Source of the DNA: Asterias rubens
Lineage: Eukaryota
NCBI RefSeq assembly: GCF_902459465.1
Contig: NC_047062.1
Coordinates: 30,876,001 to 30,940,000, forward strand
Direction: 5' to 3'
Length of the DNA: 64,000 bases
A program made the translations under genes and the position numbers. This document shows, piece by piece, positions 15,396 through 63,502 of this stretch (its first letter is position 1; each line of letters starts with the position of its first letter). The notes below the pieces were generated by a model, which did no database searches, was not told where the DNA came from, and worked only from the letters and a program-made list of their open reading frames with translations.

Positions 15396-15549
15396 TTAAG
15401 AAATCATTTAGGTAAGAGGTAAATGTACATCTCTGCTAACGATTGTGTCGACTGCATGCAATCAATGCATCATTAAGAAATCATTTAGGTAAGAGGTAAA
15501 TGTACATCTCTGCTAACGATTGTGTCGACTGCATGCAATCAATGCATCA
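15396..15549. repeat. 77-bp direct tandem duplication, private to the first S2 spacer
   Basis: Two adjacent copies starting TTAAGAAATCATTTAGG; single copy near 35.0 kb; deleted in the second S2. Confidence 0.9.
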
Positions 15550-47200: not shown

Positions 47201-50200
47201 AGTAGAAATTTAAAATTTCCTCATAGGGTGCCCTTTGCTTAAGAGAAACAGCCTTGGTGCCCTTGCCTTTTCAAAAACGAAGCATACAGGCCTGACCATT
47301 ACACAATGCTATTAAAGGAATAGGTCTCATACTTCAAAAACGTAGCTCCACAAATCTTGCAGGACAAGATAACTGAGTGCTTTGCAGGCCTGTAGAGTGT
47401 GCTTCGTTAGGATACACTATGAGGAAATTTTAAATTTATACTAGAGCATTTCAAGGGCACCAAGGGGCGGGGAGGCATTCGCCTTACTTCCTTGAAGTAT
47501 CAGGCTTGGCTTTGAAATGCCCCTCAGGGTGTGATCAAGCGCTATACAAGAACATAGTATTATCAGTAGTATTAGCCTAGCATGATCTTACTGTGGTATT
47601 CTGAATGGTATGTCCTCTTTGTGGTAGAGAGTTGAACCCCAGACTTTGTGGACGGGAACCTGGCAGGATTTCTCTACAGCTCTTTCTACATCCGTCTCCT
47701 CTCTAGTTGCCTAAGATATAAATGTGAAGAATCCTGTTGGTAAGTCAATACGTTACACTTTGCAGGCCTGATACTTAAAGGCAGTGGACACTAAGCTTGG
47801 GCGATATCGATTTATTTTATTCACGATATATCGCCGACAATATATCGCGATATTCGATATAATCAGTCTTAAAACTCCAAGTGAAAGTTGTAGAAAAGAC
47901 AGTCCAGGCATAAGAGAGGTGTTCTAATGACCTATTCTTCCGGTTTTACTTCAAACCTATGAGGTGCAAGATGTCTCAGCTAGCAAATACATCGCGGTAT
48001 TTAATCGATATATCGATATATTGCGATGATCGCGATATATTGCGATATATCGCGATATATCGATATTTCGATTAAAACCAAATCCATCCGATATCGAAAT
48101 CGTGTCCAAATTAATATCGCGATATTCGATAATATCGTGATATCGCCCAAGCTTAGTGGACACTATTGGTAATTACTAAAAATAATTATTAGCATAAAAC
48201 CTCACTTGGTAATGAGTAATAGAGAGCTGTTGATAGTATACAACATTGTGAGAAACGGCTCCCTCTGAAGTAACGTAGTTTTCGAGACAGAAGTAATTTC
48301 CCAGGATTTGATTTTGAGGTCTCGAAATCAAGCATCTGAAAGCACACAACTTCTTAGGGTGTTTTTTCTTCTATTATTATCTCGCAACTTCACTGACCAA
48401 TTCAGCTCAAATTTTCAGCTCAAGGTATGTTTTTTTCATACATACATGTATGTTGAGATACACCAAGTGAGGAGACTGGTCATTTACAATTACCAATAGT
48501 GTCCAGTGTCTTTAAGGAGGCAACGGAGGCGATTGCCTCCATGCCCCCTGGTCATTGCATTGGTGCCCTTGAAATGCCCCAGTAGAAATTTACAACTTCT
48601 TCATGCCTTGGTGCTATTGTCCTTTCAGTTGTGGCATGACGAAAGTAATTATCATCAACGGACTAAAAGCGGCTCTCATAAAGAAAATTGCTCTATGATT
48701 TTAACTTTTTGTTCTCTAAAAAAGAAATTGACGGCTAATGAAGCTGAAAATTCTACAGGTAAACTATATGACATATATCTTCATTCACAGAGATTTAGAA
48801 TTCAGATCACGACAAAAACTTCACATGATCTACAAAAGTAAACGGCGGCTATCCACTGATCAATAATAAGTTTCAGTGAATAAATCAATAAATACAAATG
48901 GTATCTAACGAACATTGATTATAATGTCTAAAGGCACACAGTTTACACCAACCTCTTGCTGTAGTGCTACTGCTTTGACGTTCTCTTTACCTAGCTGGCT
49001 GATCAAGTTGGTAATAACTTTCTCAGGTTCACCTCTACTGACAACCAGTTCACTGGAGGAGATATCAAATCAATACAAGCTTAGAAAATGTGTTCAAGCA
49101 GCCTTCAGGAAATATTCTAAATTATGGGAAAGGCTGGATTTGACAAAGATTTAAAAGACTAGTGTTATTATAGGACTAGCCTAAAATTTTAAACCTCCAA
49201 GGAAATGTCCTTTATTAACCTTACCCTTTGTGAAATCGACCCCATGAATCATGAGCTACTTTATCAACAGTAAGGGACAAATTCGACGACCAATTGAGCT
49301 CAAATTTTCACAGGTTTGTTATTTCATGCATATTTTGAGATCCACCAAGTGAGAAGACTGGTCTTTGACAATTACCAAAAGTGTTTAGGGATTTGGCCCC
49401 ATGTAATAAATGGGTCTTATTATTTCAAGCATAGCTCTGCATACAATGTACATTGGTAGACAAAACAATGAGCACTTTCAGACATACCTGGGTTAAAGGC
49501 ACCAGACACATTTTGGTTATTGTCAAAGATGCAGTATTCTCACTTGGTGAATGAATCCAAACAATGCATAACAAAATAACAAACACTGTGAAAACTCGGG
49601 CTCAATTGGTCATTGATTTTGCAAGAGAATAATTTAAGAAAAACACCCTTGTTGCATTACTTTGTGTTCTTTCAAATTCATAATAAAATGCCAAAGCCGA
49701 AGTCTTTTTATATTTGAGTAAGAAATTACCTCTTTCTCAAAAACTACGCTATCAACAGCTCTCCATTGCTTGTAACCAAGTAACTTTTATGCTAACAGTT
49801 ATTTTAAATAATAACACCATAGTGCCTTTAAATGACAGAAAATTTAATACTGAAAATAAAAGTGAAGTTGTGATGTGAGGAAGTTTTGGGGAATTTTGTC
49901 TAATCAAGGGGATGAAATTTTTGCTAAGATTCTATGTAATAAAATAAATATTCCTATCACCTGCCAACACTCTTGAGGGAATCCTTCAGATCATGCAAGG
50001 TTTGCAGTAAGAACTTGAGACGATGTGGTCCAGTCTTGGGGAAGGAGTAATGCCACGTACCGCTGTAATGACGAGGGTCTAAACAGTACAACGGTACAAC
50101 AAAGTCTGCATTCAGATGGGCCCAGTGTAACACCTAGAAATCAGGACGTAAAATAAAAAAATTAAAAAACTGACTGATGGCCGAAACTGTGTATTTATAA

Positions 50201-50978
50201 CTTAATAAGAAATTTTACATTTTGTAATTTTATGAATATAATTTCAACATAAATTCAAGAGCTATAACTTACAATAGAAAAATATTTGTACAAACAATCA
50301 GTTGAATAAGTTTCCTGATTTGCCCCCTTTTAAAATCTTCAATTCAACCATACCAAACATAAAAGTATAAACAGATTAAACTATAAAAGTTAAACTCACA
50401 ACTGCCTTAAAAACGTCACAAAAGATTTTCAATATCTGCATGATCTCAGGCAACATGATCATACAATAATTTGTAAAACCGCAAGTGTGACTTAATTAAT
50501 AATTAATTGTATTTTTAATATAATAGCCTATCCCTAGCCTAGGCAATAGGTTGTAACCGTGCAGGATGAAAATGAGACTATTATAATTTTATAAATTTTA
50601 AAAAATAATAAATAAAATTATTAATAAACTTGAAATTGAATGAATCAAACTGCAAACAACAAACCACTCACGTCACTGTTCTGTCATTTTAATTGTTGAG
50701 GTGGTAGAGAGGTGGAATTCGGAAAGCTGGACAAGTATGCAATAAACGAAAAACCGATAGCGCCCCCCGGTCCGCCCCCTTTAAACATTATGACCAGCAA
50801 CATCCCCAGCGCGACCCCCCAGCGCTGTACAGATCTGATGTTGCAGGTTGCAGTTTATTTTTATTTTTTTAGGTTGCACACTTTGTTGCAGCCCGACACA
50901 AGTCTTACTCACCTCATTATCATGATACCTTAAGTCATTTCTCAGTAAGCATATGATAGTCTTCAATTTGGTCGACAT
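41288..50978 (-). CDS. cry-dash: Cryptochrome DASH, 13 exons, 512 aa: 50978-50913, 50133-49961, 49052-48953, 47710-47592, 46714-46566, 46001-45913, 45336-45263, 43875-43786, 43674-43595, 43053-42845, 42517-42398, 41956-41783, 41383-41288
   Basis: [101 protein letters not shown]-terminal RGVDFYF; all introns GT-AG with matching phases; 1539 nt. Confidence 0.95.
42020..42225 (-). mobile_element. tRNA-derived SINE in cry-dash intron
   Basis: Minus strand reads A-box-like GTGGCCGGGCGGATAAG and B box GGTTCGAATCC, followed by a non-tRNA body. Confidence 0.6.
43124..43254. mobile_element. Short MITE with ~45-bp imperfect TIRs
   Basis: AGCCGTGTCCGAAACAG..GGCTACAGCTACGGCTAGAT versus ATCTAGCTGTAGCTGTAGCC..CTGTTTCAGACACGGCCT. 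Confidence 0.6.
43903..44767. mobile_element. Non-autonomous hAT element
   Basis: TIR TAAGCTTGGGCGGTTCC / GGAACCGCCCAAGCTTA; 8-bp TSD ATCGATAA / ATCAATAA; subterminal AACCG repeats; internal 16-bp tandem repeat ~44385-44455. Confidence 0.8.
46841..47095 (+). mobile_element. tRNA-derived SINE
   Basis: A-box-like GTGGTTGAGTGG, B box GGTTCGAGTCCC, then TCCTTGAGCCAGACACTCAACC, a motif typical of deuterostome SINE bodies. Confidence 0.65.
47120..47294. mobile_element. CAGGCCTG-terminated interspersed repeat (relatives 47385-47510, 47763, 55998, 57523-57916, ~60770-60900)
   Basis: Recurrent GGAGGCAACGGAGGCGATTGCCTCC / GTGCCCTT core bounded by CAGGCCTG. Confidence 0.6.
47775..48515. mobile_element. 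Kolobok-like MITE (TTAA TSD) interrupted by a hAT MITE
   Basis: TTAA-AGGCAGTGGACAC ... GTGTCCAGTGTCT-TTAA; same family as the S1 element. Confidence 0.8.
47792..48155. mobile_element. hAT MITE with perfect 8-bp TSD GTGGACAC
   Basis: TIR TAAGCTTGGGCGATATC / GATATCGCCCAAGCTTA; TSD at 47784-47791 and 48156-48163; many CGATAT subterminal motifs. Confidence 0.88.
49493..49831. mobile_element. Kolobok-like MITE
   Basis: TTAA-AGGCAC ... GTGCCT-TTAA; internal similarity to the S1 element. Confidence 0.65.
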
Positions 50979-51169
50979 CTTGATGTTTTTCCTGAGCCAC
51001 AATGGCCGAAAATTGTGTGTTTTTACTCAGTTCTTGTAACTCTTTGACGAGTATGACATGCCTCGGCTTACGTAATGTAAACCAGCCGCAAATTGGACCT
51101 ACAAATGCAAGCCGTATATTCAGGCCTAGATCTAGATCCAATTAGCGGCTAGCCTCTGAGCTTCTAAAA
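50979..51169. promoter_or_regulatory. Putative compact bidirectional promoter between cry-dash and MRPS18A
   Basis: Divergent ATGs only 191 bp apart; CCAAT at ~51138; YY1-like AAAATGGCG over the MRPS18A start. Confidence 0.65.
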
Positions 51170-53994
51170 ATGGCGACTCGCAGCGTTCTTCGTGCGGCAT
51201 GCTCTATATTAATTAGAGAAATACCACCTTTTCACTCGACTCTTTTTAATTTTAATATTAATCAAAGTAGTGGAATATCCAGAGTTTTGTTGTCAAATGT
51301 GGCGAAGTTTTCAACATCTTCAACCACACGTTCGAAGTTACGAAGGGAAGGTAACTATCTCCTTGCAACTTCCATTCTTTTTTTTTGTTACTTGTTAAAA
51401 ATTAAACTGTGCAGTGTAGCAGTAGAGGGCGCATTTTGTATTTTTGTTTTTTTTACAATTTAAAGTGTGGTACTGGTATACAAAATACGATTACAATGAG
51501 TGTAATTGTAACTTACAAATAATATTAAAAGAACTAGGTTTTTTAGTCTTGGGGTTGGGTTTGTTATTGATCAAAACAAGAATATTTTAAATTAAAGACT
51601 GGGGATTGTTTGATTTTCCAGTCATCTGTCGATTCAATTCATTTAGCTACATTAGTATAGTAGAACAGTTTAACACATTTAATCTTTGAAAAGTGTGAGT
51701 CTGATTTTAGTGATTATAATACTAGTTCGCATTGATTGGCCGCCCACATTGATTGCGAAAATGCACAGCCAGCCGATAATCTACCTTCCATGTCCAGCTG
51801 TCTTGGGTGTGGGGAGGAGGAGGTGAGGGTCTGATTGACTTGGAATTTAAGAGGAGGGGACAAAATTTACCAGCAGATCTGATCATCAAGCATGTCGAGC
51901 CTCAAGGGGAGGATCAAGGGCTCTCATTCAATATTTTCACGAACTTCACGTTCTTTCTTATTTTCATTTTGTTTACAGTGACAGAAACAACTGATGGAAA
52001 TCTAACTACAGTAAGTGTTAACTAGAGCTGAAAATCTTAACCCCAAGTTACCAATTAGATGGAAAAAATCAAGGACTTTAAAAGATCAGTCTCTGTGTAT
52101 GTATATTAAAACTTTTAATAGAGAAAATGTCATTTATTTTATTATAATACCAAAGATCAATGTAACTGCAGTCAGGTCGAAGACCTTTGTTTGCGATACA
52201 CAGTCGCGAATGCGCTTTGTTTCTACGATCCCAAGATCTCAAAATGAATGAACATGGTATCAAGGCAAAATAAATCCAATCAACAATTTGTTGATTGGAC
52301 AAAACAACCAAACAAACAAACAAATAAACAAACAAACAAACAGAATACTTGTTAACCCCCAATGTCAATCTTGAAAATCTGGATTTGCTGCTGGTCATAG
52401 CTAAGTTATGAATAATCATCATTAAATTTGCATATTTTTTTTGATTTTGCAACAGATTGAAGCCGTGTATAAGGATCCCCCAAAAAACTTCTATCCAACT
52501 GAGGATCCTCATAGGGCGTGTCCAATCTGCAGTAGAAATCTACGTGTCACATACAAGGTAAGGGAATGGACTGTAGCCAAATAAGTGGTTGAGTTACCCT
52601 GTTACTGTTAAACTGATTAAAGTTCTAGTTTACATCTTGAAAGGCTAGGGTCTGCCCCCATCAACCAACTAATTCATCGCCGCTGCTCCACCTAGTCCGG
52701 TCATGTCGCTCGTCTGGCTAAAAATGCTCTAAGCACCGCCACCAACTCCAGGGGATGCCAAGCACCAGCTCCTGGCTGGAAGAGATCTAGAGGCCGCCCT
52801 CAATCATCCTGAGCCCATCAACTTAGCCAACCTAGCGAAATCGCCAGGAAATCACAGGAGATCGGCACGACGAACCCTTGCTGTCTCTGCTGTTGATTGA
52901 TTGATTGATTGACCTTGAAAGATTTTGTTTGATAGATTGATTGATTGATCTTGAAAGTTTTTATTTATTTAAAACAGTTTGATAGGAGTATTTTGTCCTT
53001 ATTTTTGATGATAGGATGTTCTCATCTTAAGTCAGTTCATCAGACCAGATGGTGGATTGCTTCCAAGGAGGATCACAGGAGTGTGTAAGAAACAGCAGAG
53101 GCTTATACAAGAGTGTGTCAAGAGAGCACATTTAGCAGGTACGTAGCTAAGCTGGATTAAAGTTTATAATTCCATGTACAGCCACAGGCCGGCTTTCACA
53201 AACCTAACTTTGTTAGGTAAGGTAGTTCTTTGTTTTGGGGTTGTTGTTTTGTTATGTAGGGTTTTTTTTTTAGAGGGGAGGGGGAAAGGTGGATTTTTGT
53301 CATTTCATTATAGGGGAGGCCCTTTCTACCTTGAACAGATTGACTTCTCATAGATCACAACGTATTTCTTATCATTTACCACAGCTTGGGTACCCGATCA
53401 CAATTTGCTCTTTACATTTACCACAGCCTTGTTACCCGATCACAATTTGCTCTTTACATTTACCACAGCCTTGTTACCCGATCACAATTTGCTCTTTTCA
53501 TTTACCACAGCCTTGTTACCCGATCACAATTTGCTCTTTACATTTACCACAGCTTGGGTACCCGATCACAATTTGCTCTTTACATTTACCACAGCCTTGT
53601 TACCCGATCACAATTTGCTCTTTTCATTTACCACAGCCTTGTTACCCGATCACAATTTGCTCTTTTCATTTACCACAGCCTTGGTACCCGATCACAATTT
53701 GCTCTTTACATTTACCACAGCCTTGTTACCCGATCACAATTTGCTCTTTACATTTACCACAGCCTTGTTACCCGATCACAATTTGCTCTTTTCATTTACC
53801 ACAGCCTTGTTACCCGATCACAATTTGCTCTTTACATTTACCACAGCCTTGGTACGTGATCACAATTTAGCAATATTTTGTTTTTTTCATTTAATCCCAC
53901 AGGCTTGTTACCCGATCACCGTCCTCCAAAGGATGCTGGGAGGATTCCGCCAGGAGTTCACATCAGACCCAAAATCAAGTTCAATCGCTTCTGA
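51170..53994 (+). CDS. MRPS18A: Mitochondrial ribosomal protein S18A (mL66); exons 51170..51350, 51979..52010, 52456..52557, 53015..53138, 53903..53994; 176 aa
   Basis: Basic Ser/Arg-rich presequence, [50 protein letters not shown] match recognised MRPS18A; phases consistent. Confidence 0.9.
53351..53868. repeat. 42-bp minisatellite, ~12 units, in MRPS18A intron 4
   Basis: Unit CCTTGTTACCCGATCACAATTTGCTCTTT(A/T)CATTTACCACAG; the AG ends at 53384 + 42n up to 53846. Confidence 0.97.
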
Positions 53995-56373
53995 TCCAAG
54001 GAACAATTATTATGTTCTATTTTTGTAAATACTGTACAGCAAATAATTGTGTGTAAAAAAACACAATTAAAATCACATTTTGAATAGAGAATATCTATCT
54101 TGGTTAACAATTGAAAAATAGTGGATGTGGAGACTTAACTTTTGTTGGTAAAGTCTGGACTTTACGGTACATACCTTTACAGTATCTGTGAAGATTTTAC
54201 CTTATCATAGGTATGTCCTTTCAGTAAGCAAGCAGTTTTGACATGTTTGAACAGCTAATTCTACTTTCTAAAACTTCACTAGTCTTTTTCAGCCTCTCTG
54301 ATTGCATTAGTTTTTGATGGAATAAAAATGGGTTTTTGTCCCACATTTAAAACAGGAAGTTTCTTCGTTGATTTCTCTCCATTATATTATAGTTACTAAG
54401 TTTGCTTTTCTGAGACTCCTTTGACTTGGTATCGAGTATGTGATTGTGGTACCCGATAGCCAAAACAGTATTGCCTGAAGTAGCGCCCTCTTGTGACATG
54501 AGATTATGGGTTAGCTAGAATTGGTACCAAGTCTTAGATATAGGCATTTTAGTCGTCCCGATAGCCGCTACAAACAGTGCCTCTTGTGATCAACCTGCAT
54601 CATTGAGCCTAGATTGGGAGTGAGGGCACGTGATGGCTAATAATGTGGGGGCGTTTTTCGTGGGTGAGATGCAGAAGAATAATTGCAATCTAGGACTTGA
54701 ATCGAGTCTATGGGTTAGTGCGCATGATAGCCAATCTTGGGGGAGGGCAATTTCCGCGGCTGATCCAGCGAAATAACCACAACCTAGCGCATGAAATCAA
54801 GTCTGAAGAATCCATGGCTTTAAAATGCATAAAATAACAAACCTTTGAAAATTTGAGCACATTTGGTCGTCGAAGTTGCGAGATATTAATGAAAGAAAAA
54901 ACACCCTTGTCAAACGAAGTTGTGTGCTTTCAGATGCTTGATTTCGAGACCTCAAATTCTAAGTCTGAGATCTCAAAATCAAATTCGTGGAAAATTACTT
55001 CTTTCTCGAAAACAACGTCACCTCAGAGGGAGCCGTTTCTCACAATGTTTTATACTCCCATTACTCGTTACCACTTAAGGTTTCATGCTAATAATTATTT
55101 TGAGTAATTACCAATAGTGTCCACTGCCTTTAAAACTTGACACACAAGAACATCACTGATAACTTGATACTTTAAAATGTTAGTTCAACTCTTGTTTATT
55201 AACACAAAAACATTTTATATGTACATGTATATAGCCAAGAAAATGTTCTCTATATAACTTTGGATAAGAATGACAGTATTGGTTAAAAAAGTCCATTACC
55301 TGTTTGTTTAATCAAGAATCTCGCCAAAGGATAATTGTTGATAAAACAACAACAGACTAGTTCATTGAAATAATAATGCCATTGAAATGTAAACACGACA
55401 GAATTATGGCAAGTAGCTACAAATTACATGTACGTGTACATGCTGCAGACATTATTTGACCATATGATTTATTATCTGTTCAACTTGTTTTGTTTTTATG
55501 GACGGAATCTTTGAATATCTTTTTTATTAAATTTAATTTTGAAGAGTTAAGTAACTTTGTAATATTAACATAGAATACAAAAACAATGTAATAAAAGTTC
55601 AAAATTAATTTAAAAAAAACCATAAATAACAGTATCTTTTGAGAGGATTGGTTGGCCATAGCCCACCGAAATTGAGGAAACCTTTCAACTATACAAATAT
55701 TGGATTCATGTCAGTGCATTGATGTAGAATATGTAGAAATCTGGACTATTATATTTCAAAAAGCAAGTGAAATGGTGATCTAGATTTCACCGAGTGATTA
55801 TATTCTGAGGCAATGCATAGATAAAATGCATTCAATATTTTTTTTTTAAACTTTCATATAAATCCTTGTCGCTTGTTTTTTTTAACCACATGAAAGAATA
55901 AATAGAGGCGTAAACTCGTCCTCCATCTATTCTAAAAAAATTTCAAAACGTCTTAATACTGTGGATGACTCCATGTAGACGCCAGTGTAAAATGATTGGC
56001 CTGATACTTCAGGGAGGCAATGGGGGCAATTGCCTCCCTGTTGTCTGGTCATTGCCTTGGTGCCCTCCAACAGTAGAAGTTTAAAACTTACAATTTCCTC
56101 TTTATCAAGGAGAAACTGCCTTGGAGCCCTTGCCCTTTCAAAAACGAACATTAAGTTCGGGAACGACGGTATGAAAAGTCCATTAGTTATCCATATTGGA
56201 TGGGTGCCTGTACAATATGAAGTTTGAAGCTTTGTCCCACGTATCAAGTGACAAGGATCTGTAACCATTCATGTTTCTTAAATGGCACCATATAAACATT
56301 TTCAAAAGTTCCCCCTAGAATTTGCTTTCATGGAAGTATTTTAGAGACTGCACAACTCAACAATATTCCTGGC

Positions 56374-61088: not shown

Positions 61089-63502
61089 ATGGATCCAGAG
61101 ATTTCAGTGATATTCGCAGCATCACGGCCCCCAGGAGTTCCACAGTCGAAGCTCAGGGTGAAACTGCTCGAGGAATACAACCGGAAGACTTTGCCATCAC
61201 ACGAGAGCAAAATCAAGAAAATATGGGGACTACGAACCGAACAGAATCCAAAGCTTTACAACGGATCCAAGTTTCGGTTTCACTCACTCTATACTGTCAA
61301 CAATAGCGGCGAGGTCACGTTTGGTTTAGGTATCACTGGATATAAAGACTTCATCGGGACAAACTGGGCGGATAATGCAGCTGAGCTTTTAGAGTCTGGC
61401 AGGAGAGATTTCAGTAACAGCCAGGCGTATATGTCCGATGCTTTAGGTGTGGGTGCTTTTGTGCAAACAGCAGATGATTGTGTTATTTTCATACGGAGGA
61501 GTCAGCATGTTGGTGAGGCGCAAGGACTATGGGACATTCCTGGTGGTCATCCTGAGCCAGGGGTACATACATTATCTTCTTCTAACTTCCCTGCAAAAAT
61601 TTTACCTATATGTAACTACATTAACAAAAACATCTATTTGGGAATGTGAACAAATTAGGGTTGTGCATCTTTGGTTAAACTTCCTAAAAGTTCAAACAGA
61701 ACTAGTGATTTCCATAATGATAGTGTCCAGTGATTCCAATCATTCTACATTGAGAATTGGAACGAAGCTGCAAACTTCAAGTCAGAAACCCACAGTTTGA
61801 CCTGGTGCTTTGTTTTTTTTCAGCATACCAAGCAAAATATATGAAAACAAAACATTTTGGGGATTGAATTATGTGTAAGGCACATTCCTGATCAGTGAAA
61901 GGGATTTCAGTCATTCTATCAGGATGAAAAATTACTCTTAAAAGCACTACAAATTTTGTAGCGTTGGAGTAATTCAGTTGCAGTGGTTTCACCTAATCTG
62001 CAGTTTTATTTATGAATTTTCTCCCACTTGTTTAGGAAGTCAAAGGTGGTGCAGCTAGACTCGAAGACATCGTCCTGACTGACATGACTGATCTGGATGT
62101 CAGAAATGAGCTCATCTATTCCACAATTCGTGAGATCCGAGACGAGATCAACATCCCAGAGTCGGAGTTAGAGGAGCCTTACCTAATAGGACTGGCCAAA
62201 AATAACACCAGCTCAGGACGACCAAGTGCTGAATTCTTTGTCAAGTATGTGTTGAACTTTTTCACACTTATCAGACTAAAGCACGGTTCATATTCCTGTG
62301 AATGCGGTGCAAATTTTGACATCCCAGGGCAGCTAATATTTTGCAGGAGTTGAAGCACATTTCAATTAATGAGAATTATTCGGTGCAAATTTGTGACGTC
62401 AAAATTCGTATCACATTCACATTCGAGTTTGAACCGGGCTCAAATCTAGAAGTTTGTTGAGAATAGTTTAAGAAAAACTGGGCCTTCTTTTTTGATCAAT
62501 CAAACAAATAAATCTATATAATTTTTTTTATTTTGACACCCCACCACTGAAAATTGTTTTTGAAAGCCTGTTATGATATCAAACATTTTCTGAATTTGAC
62601 TGAATTGGGTTCTACCAGCCAGCAAGAAATCTCTGATCTTTACTTAAATCCGCCCTTTGTCCATCTGCTTTTTGTTTTATCCTGGCCCGCTCTCCTTTAT
62701 ACCAAGTGTTCATATAATGTCTTTGCTATTAAAATTACTTGACAGGTGCACATTACATTCTAGCAAAGTAATGGAGTTGTACAAAGCTGGTGGTGCAGAG
62801 GCAGATGAATCAACTGGGCTGAAACTCGTCCCGCTAGCGGTAACTTTAATTTCTGTTTTTTCTTGACAAATCTGTTTCTGTTGTTTACTGAGTAGTACTG
62901 GGTTAACTTAATGGCAGTGAGTTTACTCAGTAGTACTGAGTTTACTGACTATAGTGCTAAGTCAACTCAGTATTACTGAGTTAAGTGATGAGTAGCACTG
63001 AGTGGCACTGAGTAGCACTAAATACTGATTAGCACTAAATACTGATTTTACTAACTAGTGCTGAGTTAATTTAAAAGTAGATGAGTTTACTCAGTAGCAC
63101 TGAGATCAGTTTACTGACTTGCACTGAGTTAACTGAGTAGTACTGTAGTACTGAGGTAATAGAATAGTACTATTAAGTTTACTGAGTACTGAGTTTACTG
63201 AGTGGTACTGAGTTATACTAAGTAGAACTGAGTTAACTGAGTAGCACTCAGTTAATTGAGTAGTCCATTTACCGAGTCAACTGAATAGTACTGGCTTTAC
63301 TGACTTGTACTGAGTTTACTGACTTGTACTGAGTAGTACCGAGTTTACTGAGTAGTGCCAAATTGTTATTATATAAAACCATGACATTTTATTAATCCAT
63401 TTGCAGGAGGTGATGAGCATGGAAAACACTGATATGTGGAAGAAGATGGCACCATCTGCTAAAGGATGCGTCAAGATGTATACATTAATGATAGACTCAT
63501 AA
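61089..63502 (+). CDS. NUDT22: Nudix hydrolase 22; coding exons 61089..61562, 62036..62244, 62746..62839, 63407..63502; 290 aa
   Basis: MDPEIS, YNGSKFR, GITGYKDFIGTNW, YMSDALGVGA, LWDIPGGHPEP, REIRDEINIP, NNTSSGRPSAEF, EADES, MAPSAKG match recognised NUDT22; phases consistent. Confidence 0.92.
62885..63360. repeat. Degenerate ACTGAGT/AGTACT-based low-complexity tandem repeat filling most of the NUDT22 last intron
   Basis: Recurrent 8-10 bp units such as TACTGAGTT and GAGTAGTACT. Confidence 0.85.

What the first reader, a model, noticed from the sequence alone, without database searches (positions are those of the whole stretch)
53351..54028. Minisatellite made of the gene's own splice acceptor: 12 tandem decoy 3' splice sites in MRPS18A
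Seen: the 42-bp unit (TTTGCTCTTTTCATTTACCACAG|CCTTGTTACCCGATCAC) is a copy of the real intron4/exon5 junction (TTGTTTTTTTCATTTAATCCCACAG|GCTTGTTACCCGATCAC). Twelve polypyrimidine-CAG acceptors therefore precede the true one. The unit is 14 codons with no stop. Use of any decoy continues exon 4 in frame as (A)[13 protein letters not shown] repeats, reads exon 5 in a shifted frame and stops at 54028 in the last exon, so it would probably escape NMD. That gives isoforms of 206-360 aa in 14-aa steps versus 176 aa. The last unit also carries GTACGT, identical to the exon-4 donor. Inference: either an unusually strong natural test of how the spliceosome picks the distal AG, or a VNTR that tunes the output of an essential mitoribosomal gene.
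Basis: partly seen in the sequence, partly recalled or inferred. Interest (0 to 1): 0.85.

Follow-up and report, generated by a model that had tools for sequence, protein, structure and literature searches.

The report
Silent splice-acceptor minisatellite in starfish MRPS18A
The last intron of the common starfish's MRPS18A (mL66) gene holds 12 tandem copies of the gene's own intron/exon-5 junction, but assembled transcripts still use only the true splice site, so this is a new example of the known "mirage" type of minisatellite and not a demonstrated regulatory device.

Summary
A 42-bp unit repeated about 12 times (53367-53863, 95% match) fills the 3' part of intron 4 of MRPS18A/mL66. The window is identical to the Asterias rubens assembly over the 8.8 kb compared. 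Each unit copies the true acceptor plus the first 17 nt of exon 5. This puts 12 CACAG acceptors at 53384+42n, upstream of the true AG at 53902.

The functional reading is not supported.
- Assembled transcripts from two runs, one a sister-species-like sample, join 53138 to 53903 only and have zero depth over the array.
- The RefSeq protein equals the canonical model.
- A. amurensis carries the same repeat family at the same place in decayed form (about 10 units, 77% match, two AGs lost). Acanthaster and Patiria keep the intron but have no array.

So this is an old, Asterias-lineage minisatellite that was recently re-expanded in A. rubens. Contig evidence cannot exclude minor decoy use.

The kind is already described: amphioxus "mirages" (Adh3, TnC, globins, PGBD5), with the human F7 IVS7 VNTR as the 5' counterpart. 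This scan has already noted the same kind of array in other genes of this genome (s1-150083 and others). I class it as a new member of a known kind, of modest interest.

The parts
51170..53994 (+). MRPS18A / mL66 gene, start codon to stop codon. Five coding exons: 51170-51350, 51979-52010, 52456-52557, 53015-53138, 53903-53994. Product 176 aa.
   Evidence: GT..AG joints in RNA contigs of X1 and X4; splice contexts and translation; Pfam Ribosomal_S18 at 2.7e-19; PDB mL66 at 7e-27; identical to the A. rubens RefSeq protein P0021.
53015..53138 (+). Exon 4, ending ...TTAGCAG, followed by the donor GTACGT.
53139..53902 (+). Intron 4, 764 nt, the last intron. The position is conserved in Acanthaster (954 nt) and Patiria (1444 nt).
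53367..53863 (+). 42-bp minisatellite of 12 units (the first is truncated, the last is an edge unit). Each unit holds a branch candidate, a pyrimidine tract, CACAG and 17 nt copied from the start of exon 5. Decoy AGs have their G at 53384, 53426, 53468, 53510, 53552, 53594, 53636, 53678, 53720, 53762, 53804 and 53846.
53852..53857 (+). GTACGT in the last (edge) unit. It is the same hexamer as the exon-4 donor, produced by three substitutions, with no evidence of use.
53869..53870 (+). The only AG between the last decoy and the true acceptor. It lies 8-11 nt downstream of the GTGAT/ATCAC branch candidates, probably too close to be used.
   Evidence: for the positions; the non-use is inference.
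53877..53919 (+). Master copy: the true acceptor (a T7 run, then CATTTAATCCCACAG) plus the exon-5 start GCTTGTTACCCGATCAC, which codes for the conserved (G)LLPDH.
53903..53994 (+). Coding part of exon 5; stop codon at 53992-53994.
54026..54028 (+). Stop codon of the shifted frame that any decoy-spliced mRNA would reach.

Best explanation
This is a 'mirage'-type intronic minisatellite: a tandem array seeded by duplication of the segment that spans the intron-4/exon-5 boundary of MRPS18A. The copying went from exon to array, because the exonic part encodes the conserved LLPDH. The family arose in the Asterias lineage before A. rubens and A. amurensis split. It decayed in A. amurensis and was re-expanded or homogenised recently in A. 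rubens by ordinary minisatellite turnover (slippage or unequal exchange). The 12 decoy acceptors are silent or nearly so, and the spliceosome uses the last AG. Inferred reasons: the true site alone has the long U-run (T7) and a G at +1 in both species, and it alone is contiguous with the real exon body. Each decoy is followed by more intron-like pyrimidine-rich repeat. No function is needed to explain the array; selection only has to keep the decoys from competing.
For: Shown:
- Array and junction homology.
- AGLLPDHRP aligns to mammalian AGLLPNHRP in solved mitoribosomes.
- Only the canonical 53138>53903 joint appears in RNA contigs of two runs, with exon word depth 10-16 and zero depth at 53221-53826.
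- The X4 transcript shares several of A. amurensis's differences from the window, including both indels, so the sister-species-like sample also splices canonically.
- The RefSeq protein is the canonical model.
- A. amurensis intron 4 has about 10 decayed units of the same family (77% match, 8 keep an AG, 2 lost it).
- There is no array in Acanthaster or Patiria, although the intron position is the same.
- Unique intron sequence is 91-92% identical between the two Asterias species, whereas A. rubens units are 95-100% alike. The present array is therefore younger than the species split.
- Array words occur in at least 6 organism-A runs from three studies.
- Literature: mirages do not disturb splicing in amphioxus, and the F7 VNTR pseudo-sites stay silent.
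Against: Contigs drop rare variants and the tool warns that a hole proves nothing. Cumulative decoy use below roughly 10-20% cannot be excluded; that bound is my own rough inference from word depths of 10-16. By simple measures the decoys are as good as this gene's other real acceptors, so their silence is not explained by weakness alone. One marine metatranscriptome (X16) holds 24% of the array words. That could be pre-mRNA, contaminating DNA or decoy-spliced RNA, and I could not lay it. Copy-number polymorphism within A. rubens was not measured.
Confidence: 0.8

Rival explanations
1. Functional VNTR: decoy acceptors are used at a level set by copy number. This would divert part of the pre-mRNA into C-terminally altered, NMD-resistant isoforms of 206-360 aa and so tune mL66 output.
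For: The decoys are complete-looking 3' splice sites with good branch-to-AG spacing. The unit is 14 codons and open in the frame entered from exon 4. Copy number and unit state differ between the two Asterias species. X16 holds some array words in an RNA library.
Against: There is no decoy joint and no array depth in the two informative RNA runs. No organism-labelled RNA run holds array words. RefSeq gives a single canonical product. A. amurensis units decay in the exonic and intronic parts alike and lose AGs, as expected for neutral sequence. An open frame in a period divisible by 3 is expected by chance about 1 time in 6 (my estimate: 1/3 x (61/64)^14).
Confidence: 0.08
2. The array acts as an intronic splicing modulator without being spliced. 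It would be a multivalent sink for pyrimidine-tract binding proteins (U2AF or PTB-like, given the UCUU cores in each unit) that slows or gates removal of the terminal intron.
For: There are 12 repeated pyrimidine tracts with CUCUUU cores directly upstream of the true site. Beyond that this is inference only.
Against: There is no sign of retained intron in the transcript contigs. The array is absent in Acanthaster and Patiria and decayed in A. amurensis. The same kind of array recurs in many unrelated genes of this genome according to unverified scan notes, which points to a mutational rather than a gene-specific origin.
Confidence: 0.07
3. Assembly artefact: the array is a mis-assembly or an over-expansion in the reference.
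For: Tandem repeats are error-prone in assemblies, and no single contig spans the whole array.
Against: Contigs of X10 run from the unique flank into the first unit (53325-53413) and lie inside the array. Array words are present in at least 6 runs, 6 samples and 3 studies of organism A. An independent assembly of the sister species has the homologous array at the same place. The exact copy number remains unverified.
Confidence: 0.03

Closest known systems
[quoted passage not shown] 68)
   Same: The unit spans an exon-intron boundary and carries the splice signal plus some exon sequence. The array sits in the intron next to the authentic site. Acceptor-side cases exist (BflGb6). Regular splicing is not disturbed. 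Edge units escape homogenisation and copy number differs between haplotypes or species.
   Different: The host is an echinoderm (Asterias), not a cephalochordate. There are 12 near-identical 42-bp units, against 3-6 units of 150-160 bp in BflGb6. Here there is also a two-species comparison showing decay in one lineage and re-expansion in the other. No sea-star case turned up in the held literature.
Human F7 intron 7 37-bp VNTR whose first unit spans the exon 7 donor (Borensztajn et al. 2006, PMC1557585)
   Same: A natural minisatellite copies the authentic splice site into the intron. The pseudo-sites are functional in principle but stay silent, and only the site adjacent to the exon is used.
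   Different: F7 duplicates a 5' splice site with the decoys downstream of it. Here a 3' splice site is duplicated with the decoys upstream, so the 5'-to-3' scanning model proposed for F7 does not transfer directly. No mutational test exists here.
Tandem (NAGNAG-type) alternative acceptors
   Same: Several AGs compete for one donor.
   Different: The spacing is 42 nt, not 3, each AG has its own branch and pyrimidine tract, and no alternative use is seen.

Membership tests
Mirage-type minisatellite (tandem duplication of an exon-intron boundary) | Head-to-tail array with a minisatellite-size unit | tested here: met
   42 bp x 11.8 copies, 95% match.
Mirage-type minisatellite (tandem duplication of an exon-intron boundary) | The unit contains both intronic sequence with the splice signal and adjoining exon sequence of the same gene | tested here: met
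   The unit aligns to 53877-53919, which is the true acceptor plus 17 nt of exon 5. The exon part codes for the conserved LLPDH.
Mirage-type minisatellite (tandem duplication of an exon-intron boundary) | The array lies inside the intron and abuts the authentic boundary | tested here: met
   The array ends at 53863 and the true AG is at 53902.
Mirage-type minisatellite (tandem duplication of an exon-intron boundary) | Regular splicing is kept and the duplicated sites are not used | tested here: met
   Only the 53138>53903 joint appears in X1 and X4, with zero depth over the array. This is at contig resolution only, so minor isoforms are not excluded.
Mirage-type minisatellite (tandem duplication of an exon-intron boundary) | Length instability and concerted evolution, with diverged edge units | tested here: met
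   A. rubens has 12 homogeneous units and A. amurensis about 10 decayed ones. The first and last units are the most diverged. Polymorphism within the species was not testable here.
Expression-tuning VNTR / alternative-acceptor ladder | The repeated sites are actually used in mRNA | tested here: not met
   No decoy joints in RNA contigs. No organism-labelled RNA run holds array words.
Expression-tuning VNTR / alternative-acceptor ladder | Copy number varies among individuals and correlates with output | not testable with these tools
   Short-read contigs collapse the array.
Recursive splice sites / decoy exons | The acceptor is followed at once by a regenerated donor (AG|GT) | tested here: not met
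   The decoys read CAG|CC or CAG|CT.

The most novel reading that the evidence does not exclude
Acceptor-copying minisatellites may be a genome-wide, mechanistically biased feature of Asterias. This scan's notes list at least eight other genes, all on the acceptor side. It would mean that 3' splice-site regions (pyrimidine tracts flanked by short direct repeats such as the GATCAC found at both ends of this unit) are hotspots for minisatellite birth. The arrays would then form a standing pool of competent but silenced acceptors that can be recruited for new exons or introns, or that measurably slow terminal-intron removal.
Probability: 0.1. Interest if true: 0.6.

Novelty: new member of a known kind. 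Interest (0 to 1): 0.3.

Why it matters
It gives a clean, dated example of how exon edges get amplified into introns in an echinoderm: absent in two other sea-star orders, decayed in one Asterias species, freshly re-expanded in the other. It also shows that a dozen complete-looking acceptors upstream of the real one do not visibly derail splicing of an essential mitoribosomal gene. As a natural substrate it could serve for experiments on 3' splice-site choice, as the acceptor-side mirror of the F7 VNTR. The principle, however, is already documented, and no regulatory role is indicated.

Tried and rejected
1. Assembly artefact: rejected.
2. Dispersed repeat or transposon origin of the unit: rejected. 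There is no copy elsewhere in the 64-kb window and the unit is homologous to the conserved coding start of exon 5.
3. GTACGT in the last unit as a copied donor: rejected as coincidence.
4. A search of JGI metagenome contigs with one degenerate pattern matching either the canonical or a decoy exon-4 junction found nothing. This is uninformative, because not even the canonical junction is in that collection.
5. A search for a second A. rubens assembly or haplotype, to genotype the VNTR through the exact protein, found only the reference record, which is identical to the window.
6. MaxEnt-type splice scoring was not possible, since no model tables are available offline and too few sea-star introns are at hand for a matrix. 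I used simple tract measures instead.
7. Run X2 holds none of the gene's exons and so says nothing about splicing.
8. A literature search for Asterias plus minisatellite gave nothing relevant.
Full report
**1. What is there**

The window is identical over 8,825 bp to the Asterias rubens assembly GCA_902459465.3, chromosome LR699092.1.

Tandem Repeats Finder reports a 42-bp array at 53373-53868: 11.8 copies, 95% matches, no indels, score 894. It is by far the strongest tandem repeat in the 64-kb window.
- Sliced in register, 11 units differ from the consensus at 0-3 positions. The 12th, next to the true splice site, differs at 10.
- A 29-nt core across the acceptor occurs 12 times, all in the array. 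None is expected by chance.
- Every unit ends its intron-like half in CACAG. The G of each AG lies at 53384+42n (n = 0-11).
- Between the last decoy (53846) and the true AG (53902) there is only one other AG, at 53870.

**2. The gene**

I laid contigs from four public runs on 51100-54100. Single transcript contigs in X1 (organism A) and X4 (organism B) carry four GT..AG joints.
- These give exons 51170-51350, 51979-52010, 52456-52557, 53015-53138 and 53903 onward.
- The product is 176 aa and has a Ribosomal_S18 domain (2.7e-19).
- Its best match among solved structures is the mitoribosomal large-subunit protein mL66 (MRPS18A), at 7e-27. AGLLPDHRP aligns to mammalian AGLLPNHRP.
- It is identical to the RefSeq protein of A. 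rubens.

The exon-derived half of the repeat unit therefore copies conserved coding sequence. Copying went from the junction into the intron, not the other way round.

**3.

Splicing 53138 to any decoy stays open through the array as [14 protein letters not shown] repeats. It then enters exon 5 in a shifted frame and stops at 54028. The products are 206 to 360 aa in 14-aa steps.

An open frame in a period divisible by three is not remarkable; my estimate is about 1 chance in 6.

The GTACGT in the last unit is real but comes from three substitutions in an edge unit. The A. amurensis exon-4 donor is GTATGT. I read the identity as coincidence.

**4. Are the decoys used?**

Both transcript contigs join 53138 to 53903. 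No other joint touches the array.

Word depth is 10.2 (X1) and 15.9 (X4) on the exons, and 0 in every bin from 53221 to 53826. X2 does not hold the gene's exons and is uninformative.

Any decoy-spliced mRNA would contain all downstream units. A cumulative decoy share above very roughly 10-20% should therefore have left array contigs. That threshold is my inference, and the tool itself warns that contigs show presence, not absence.

In a second search with the array alone, none of the runs labelled as organism-A or organism-B RNA held array words. Only one marine metatranscriptome (X16) did, at 0.24 of 21 words.

RefSeq lists one canonical product with no isoform label.

**5. Is the array real?**

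X10 contigs run from the unique flank into the first unit (53325-53413) and lie inside the array. Array words are held by at least six organism-A runs from six samples and three studies. The sister species has the homologous array (section 6). The exact copy number is not independently verified.

**6. Comparative evidence**

Protein homologues were found in Asterias amurensis (98%), Acanthaster planci (82%) and Patiria miniata (82%). Their loci were fetched.

| Species | Intron 4 length | Array |
|---|---|---|
| A. rubens (window) | 764 nt | 12 units, 95% match |
| A. amurensis | 666 nt | about 10 decayed units, 77% match |
| Acanthaster planci | 954 nt | none |
| Patiria miniata | 1444 nt | none |

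- All four species have the intron at the same codon position.
- In A. amurensis, TRF sees 4.7 copies at 77% match. Alignment shows about ten recognisable units, some truncated. Six keep CAG, one has TAG, one has AAG, and two have lost the AG (GTAA, ACTG).
- Unique intron sequence is 91-92% identical between the two Asterias species. A. rubens units are 95-100% alike, while A. amurensis units are much more diverged than the species are.
- The family therefore predates the species split. The present A. rubens array is a young re-expansion or homogenisation.
- The CTCTTTTCA variant is shared with A. amurensis. The majority CTCTTTACA variant is specific to A. rubens.
- The X4 transcript shares several of A. 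amurensis's differences from the window: 53970 C>T, 54001 G>A, the 3-nt deletion at 54006 and the 6-nt deletion in exon 1. That lineage therefore also uses the canonical site.

**7. Why the last AG wins (inference)**

By simple measures the decoys are not defective.
- They have 15-16 pyrimidines in the 20 nt before the AG, against 14-16 for the gene's four real acceptors.
- They have ACAG at -4 to -1.
- They have an ATCAC branch candidate 26 nt upstream.

Two things set the true site apart.
- It has a T7 run and a G at +1; the decoys have at most T4 and a C at +1. The T7 run is present at the true site in both Asterias species, and no decoy unit in either species has a T run longer than 5.
- It alone continues into real exon sequence. 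Each decoy is followed by 17 nt of exon copy and then another pyrimidine tract.

The likely branch for the true site (GTGAT or ATCAC, 40-43 nt upstream) sits 8-11 nt before the AG at 53870. That is probably too close for that AG to be used.

I commit to "stronger U-tract plus adjacency to the exon body" as the mechanism, with moderate confidence. It needs the minigene test listed in the next steps.

The unit is bounded on both sides by GATCAC: at 53355-53360 in the 5' flank, conserved in A. amurensis, and at the end of the exon-derived part. This fits a first duplication by slippage between short direct repeats. It could equally be the remnant of an older unit.

**8. What is known**

- They include acceptor-side cases, vary in copy number between haplotypes, and do not disturb regular splicing (PMC3087553; PMC3902484).
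- The human F7 intron-7 37-bp VNTR is the donor-side counterpart. Its pseudo-sites are functional but silent (PMC1557585).
- I found no sea-star report in the held literature.
- Within this scan, the same kind of array was already noted in other genes of this genome. One follow-up (s1-150083) reached the same classification. That note gave me the lead to the term "mirages", which I checked in the papers. I did not test its statement that the numbers fit chance.
- For scale, my estimate is that a random 54-bp duplication inside this compact 2.8-kb gene with 8 exon edges would span an edge about 15% of the time.

**9. Verdict**

This is a new, well-dated member of a known kind. Interest is modest. 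The residual novelty lies in a possible genome-wide acceptor-side bias of such arrays in Asterias, which was not tested here.

Noticed in passing
window 53159-53196 (intron 4) and 52752-52912 (intron 3): Short stretches with very high summed contig depth (up to about 1,290) and many loose ends going into unrelated sequence in all four runs. They look like pieces of dispersed repeats that are also present in many transcripts.
   Followed up: no
window 51244 (exon 1): A 6-nt in-frame deletion relative to the window appears in the transcript contigs of X1 (organism A) and X4 (organism B). It matches the 174-aa A. amurensis protein. X10 (organism A) lacks it. It is either a shared polymorphism or X1 comes from a different population or species than labelled.
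   Followed up: partly
window 15396-15549: A perfect 77-bp x 2 tandem duplication whose unit contains TTTAGGTAAGAGGTAAATG, which is donor-like (AG|GTAAGA). It might be another duplicated exon edge. The gene context was not examined.
   Followed up: no
window 52893-52966 (intron 3, about 50 nt upstream of exon 4): A 36-bp x 2.1 repeat (TTGA-rich) containing TTTGATAG, which resembles the exon-4 acceptor TGATGATAG|GATG. It could be a small, decayed acceptor-side duplication. The similarity is weak.
   Followed up: no
window 62883-63356: A degenerate 19-bp minisatellite of 24.7 copies at 63% match. It is the only other long array in the window.
   Followed up: no
scan notes for this genome: All eight other first-stage titles about splice-site minisatellites in this genome concern acceptors rather than donors. 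This may be a reader bias or a real acceptor-side bias in where these arrays arise.
   Followed up: no
window 48170-50978 (- strand) and from about 56374 (- strand): The neighbouring genes are a DNA photolyase/cryptochrome-type gene upstream and a Radial_spoke (PF04712) gene downstream. The same neighbours are seen in A. amurensis. Acanthaster and Patiria share the downstream one.
   Followed up: partly
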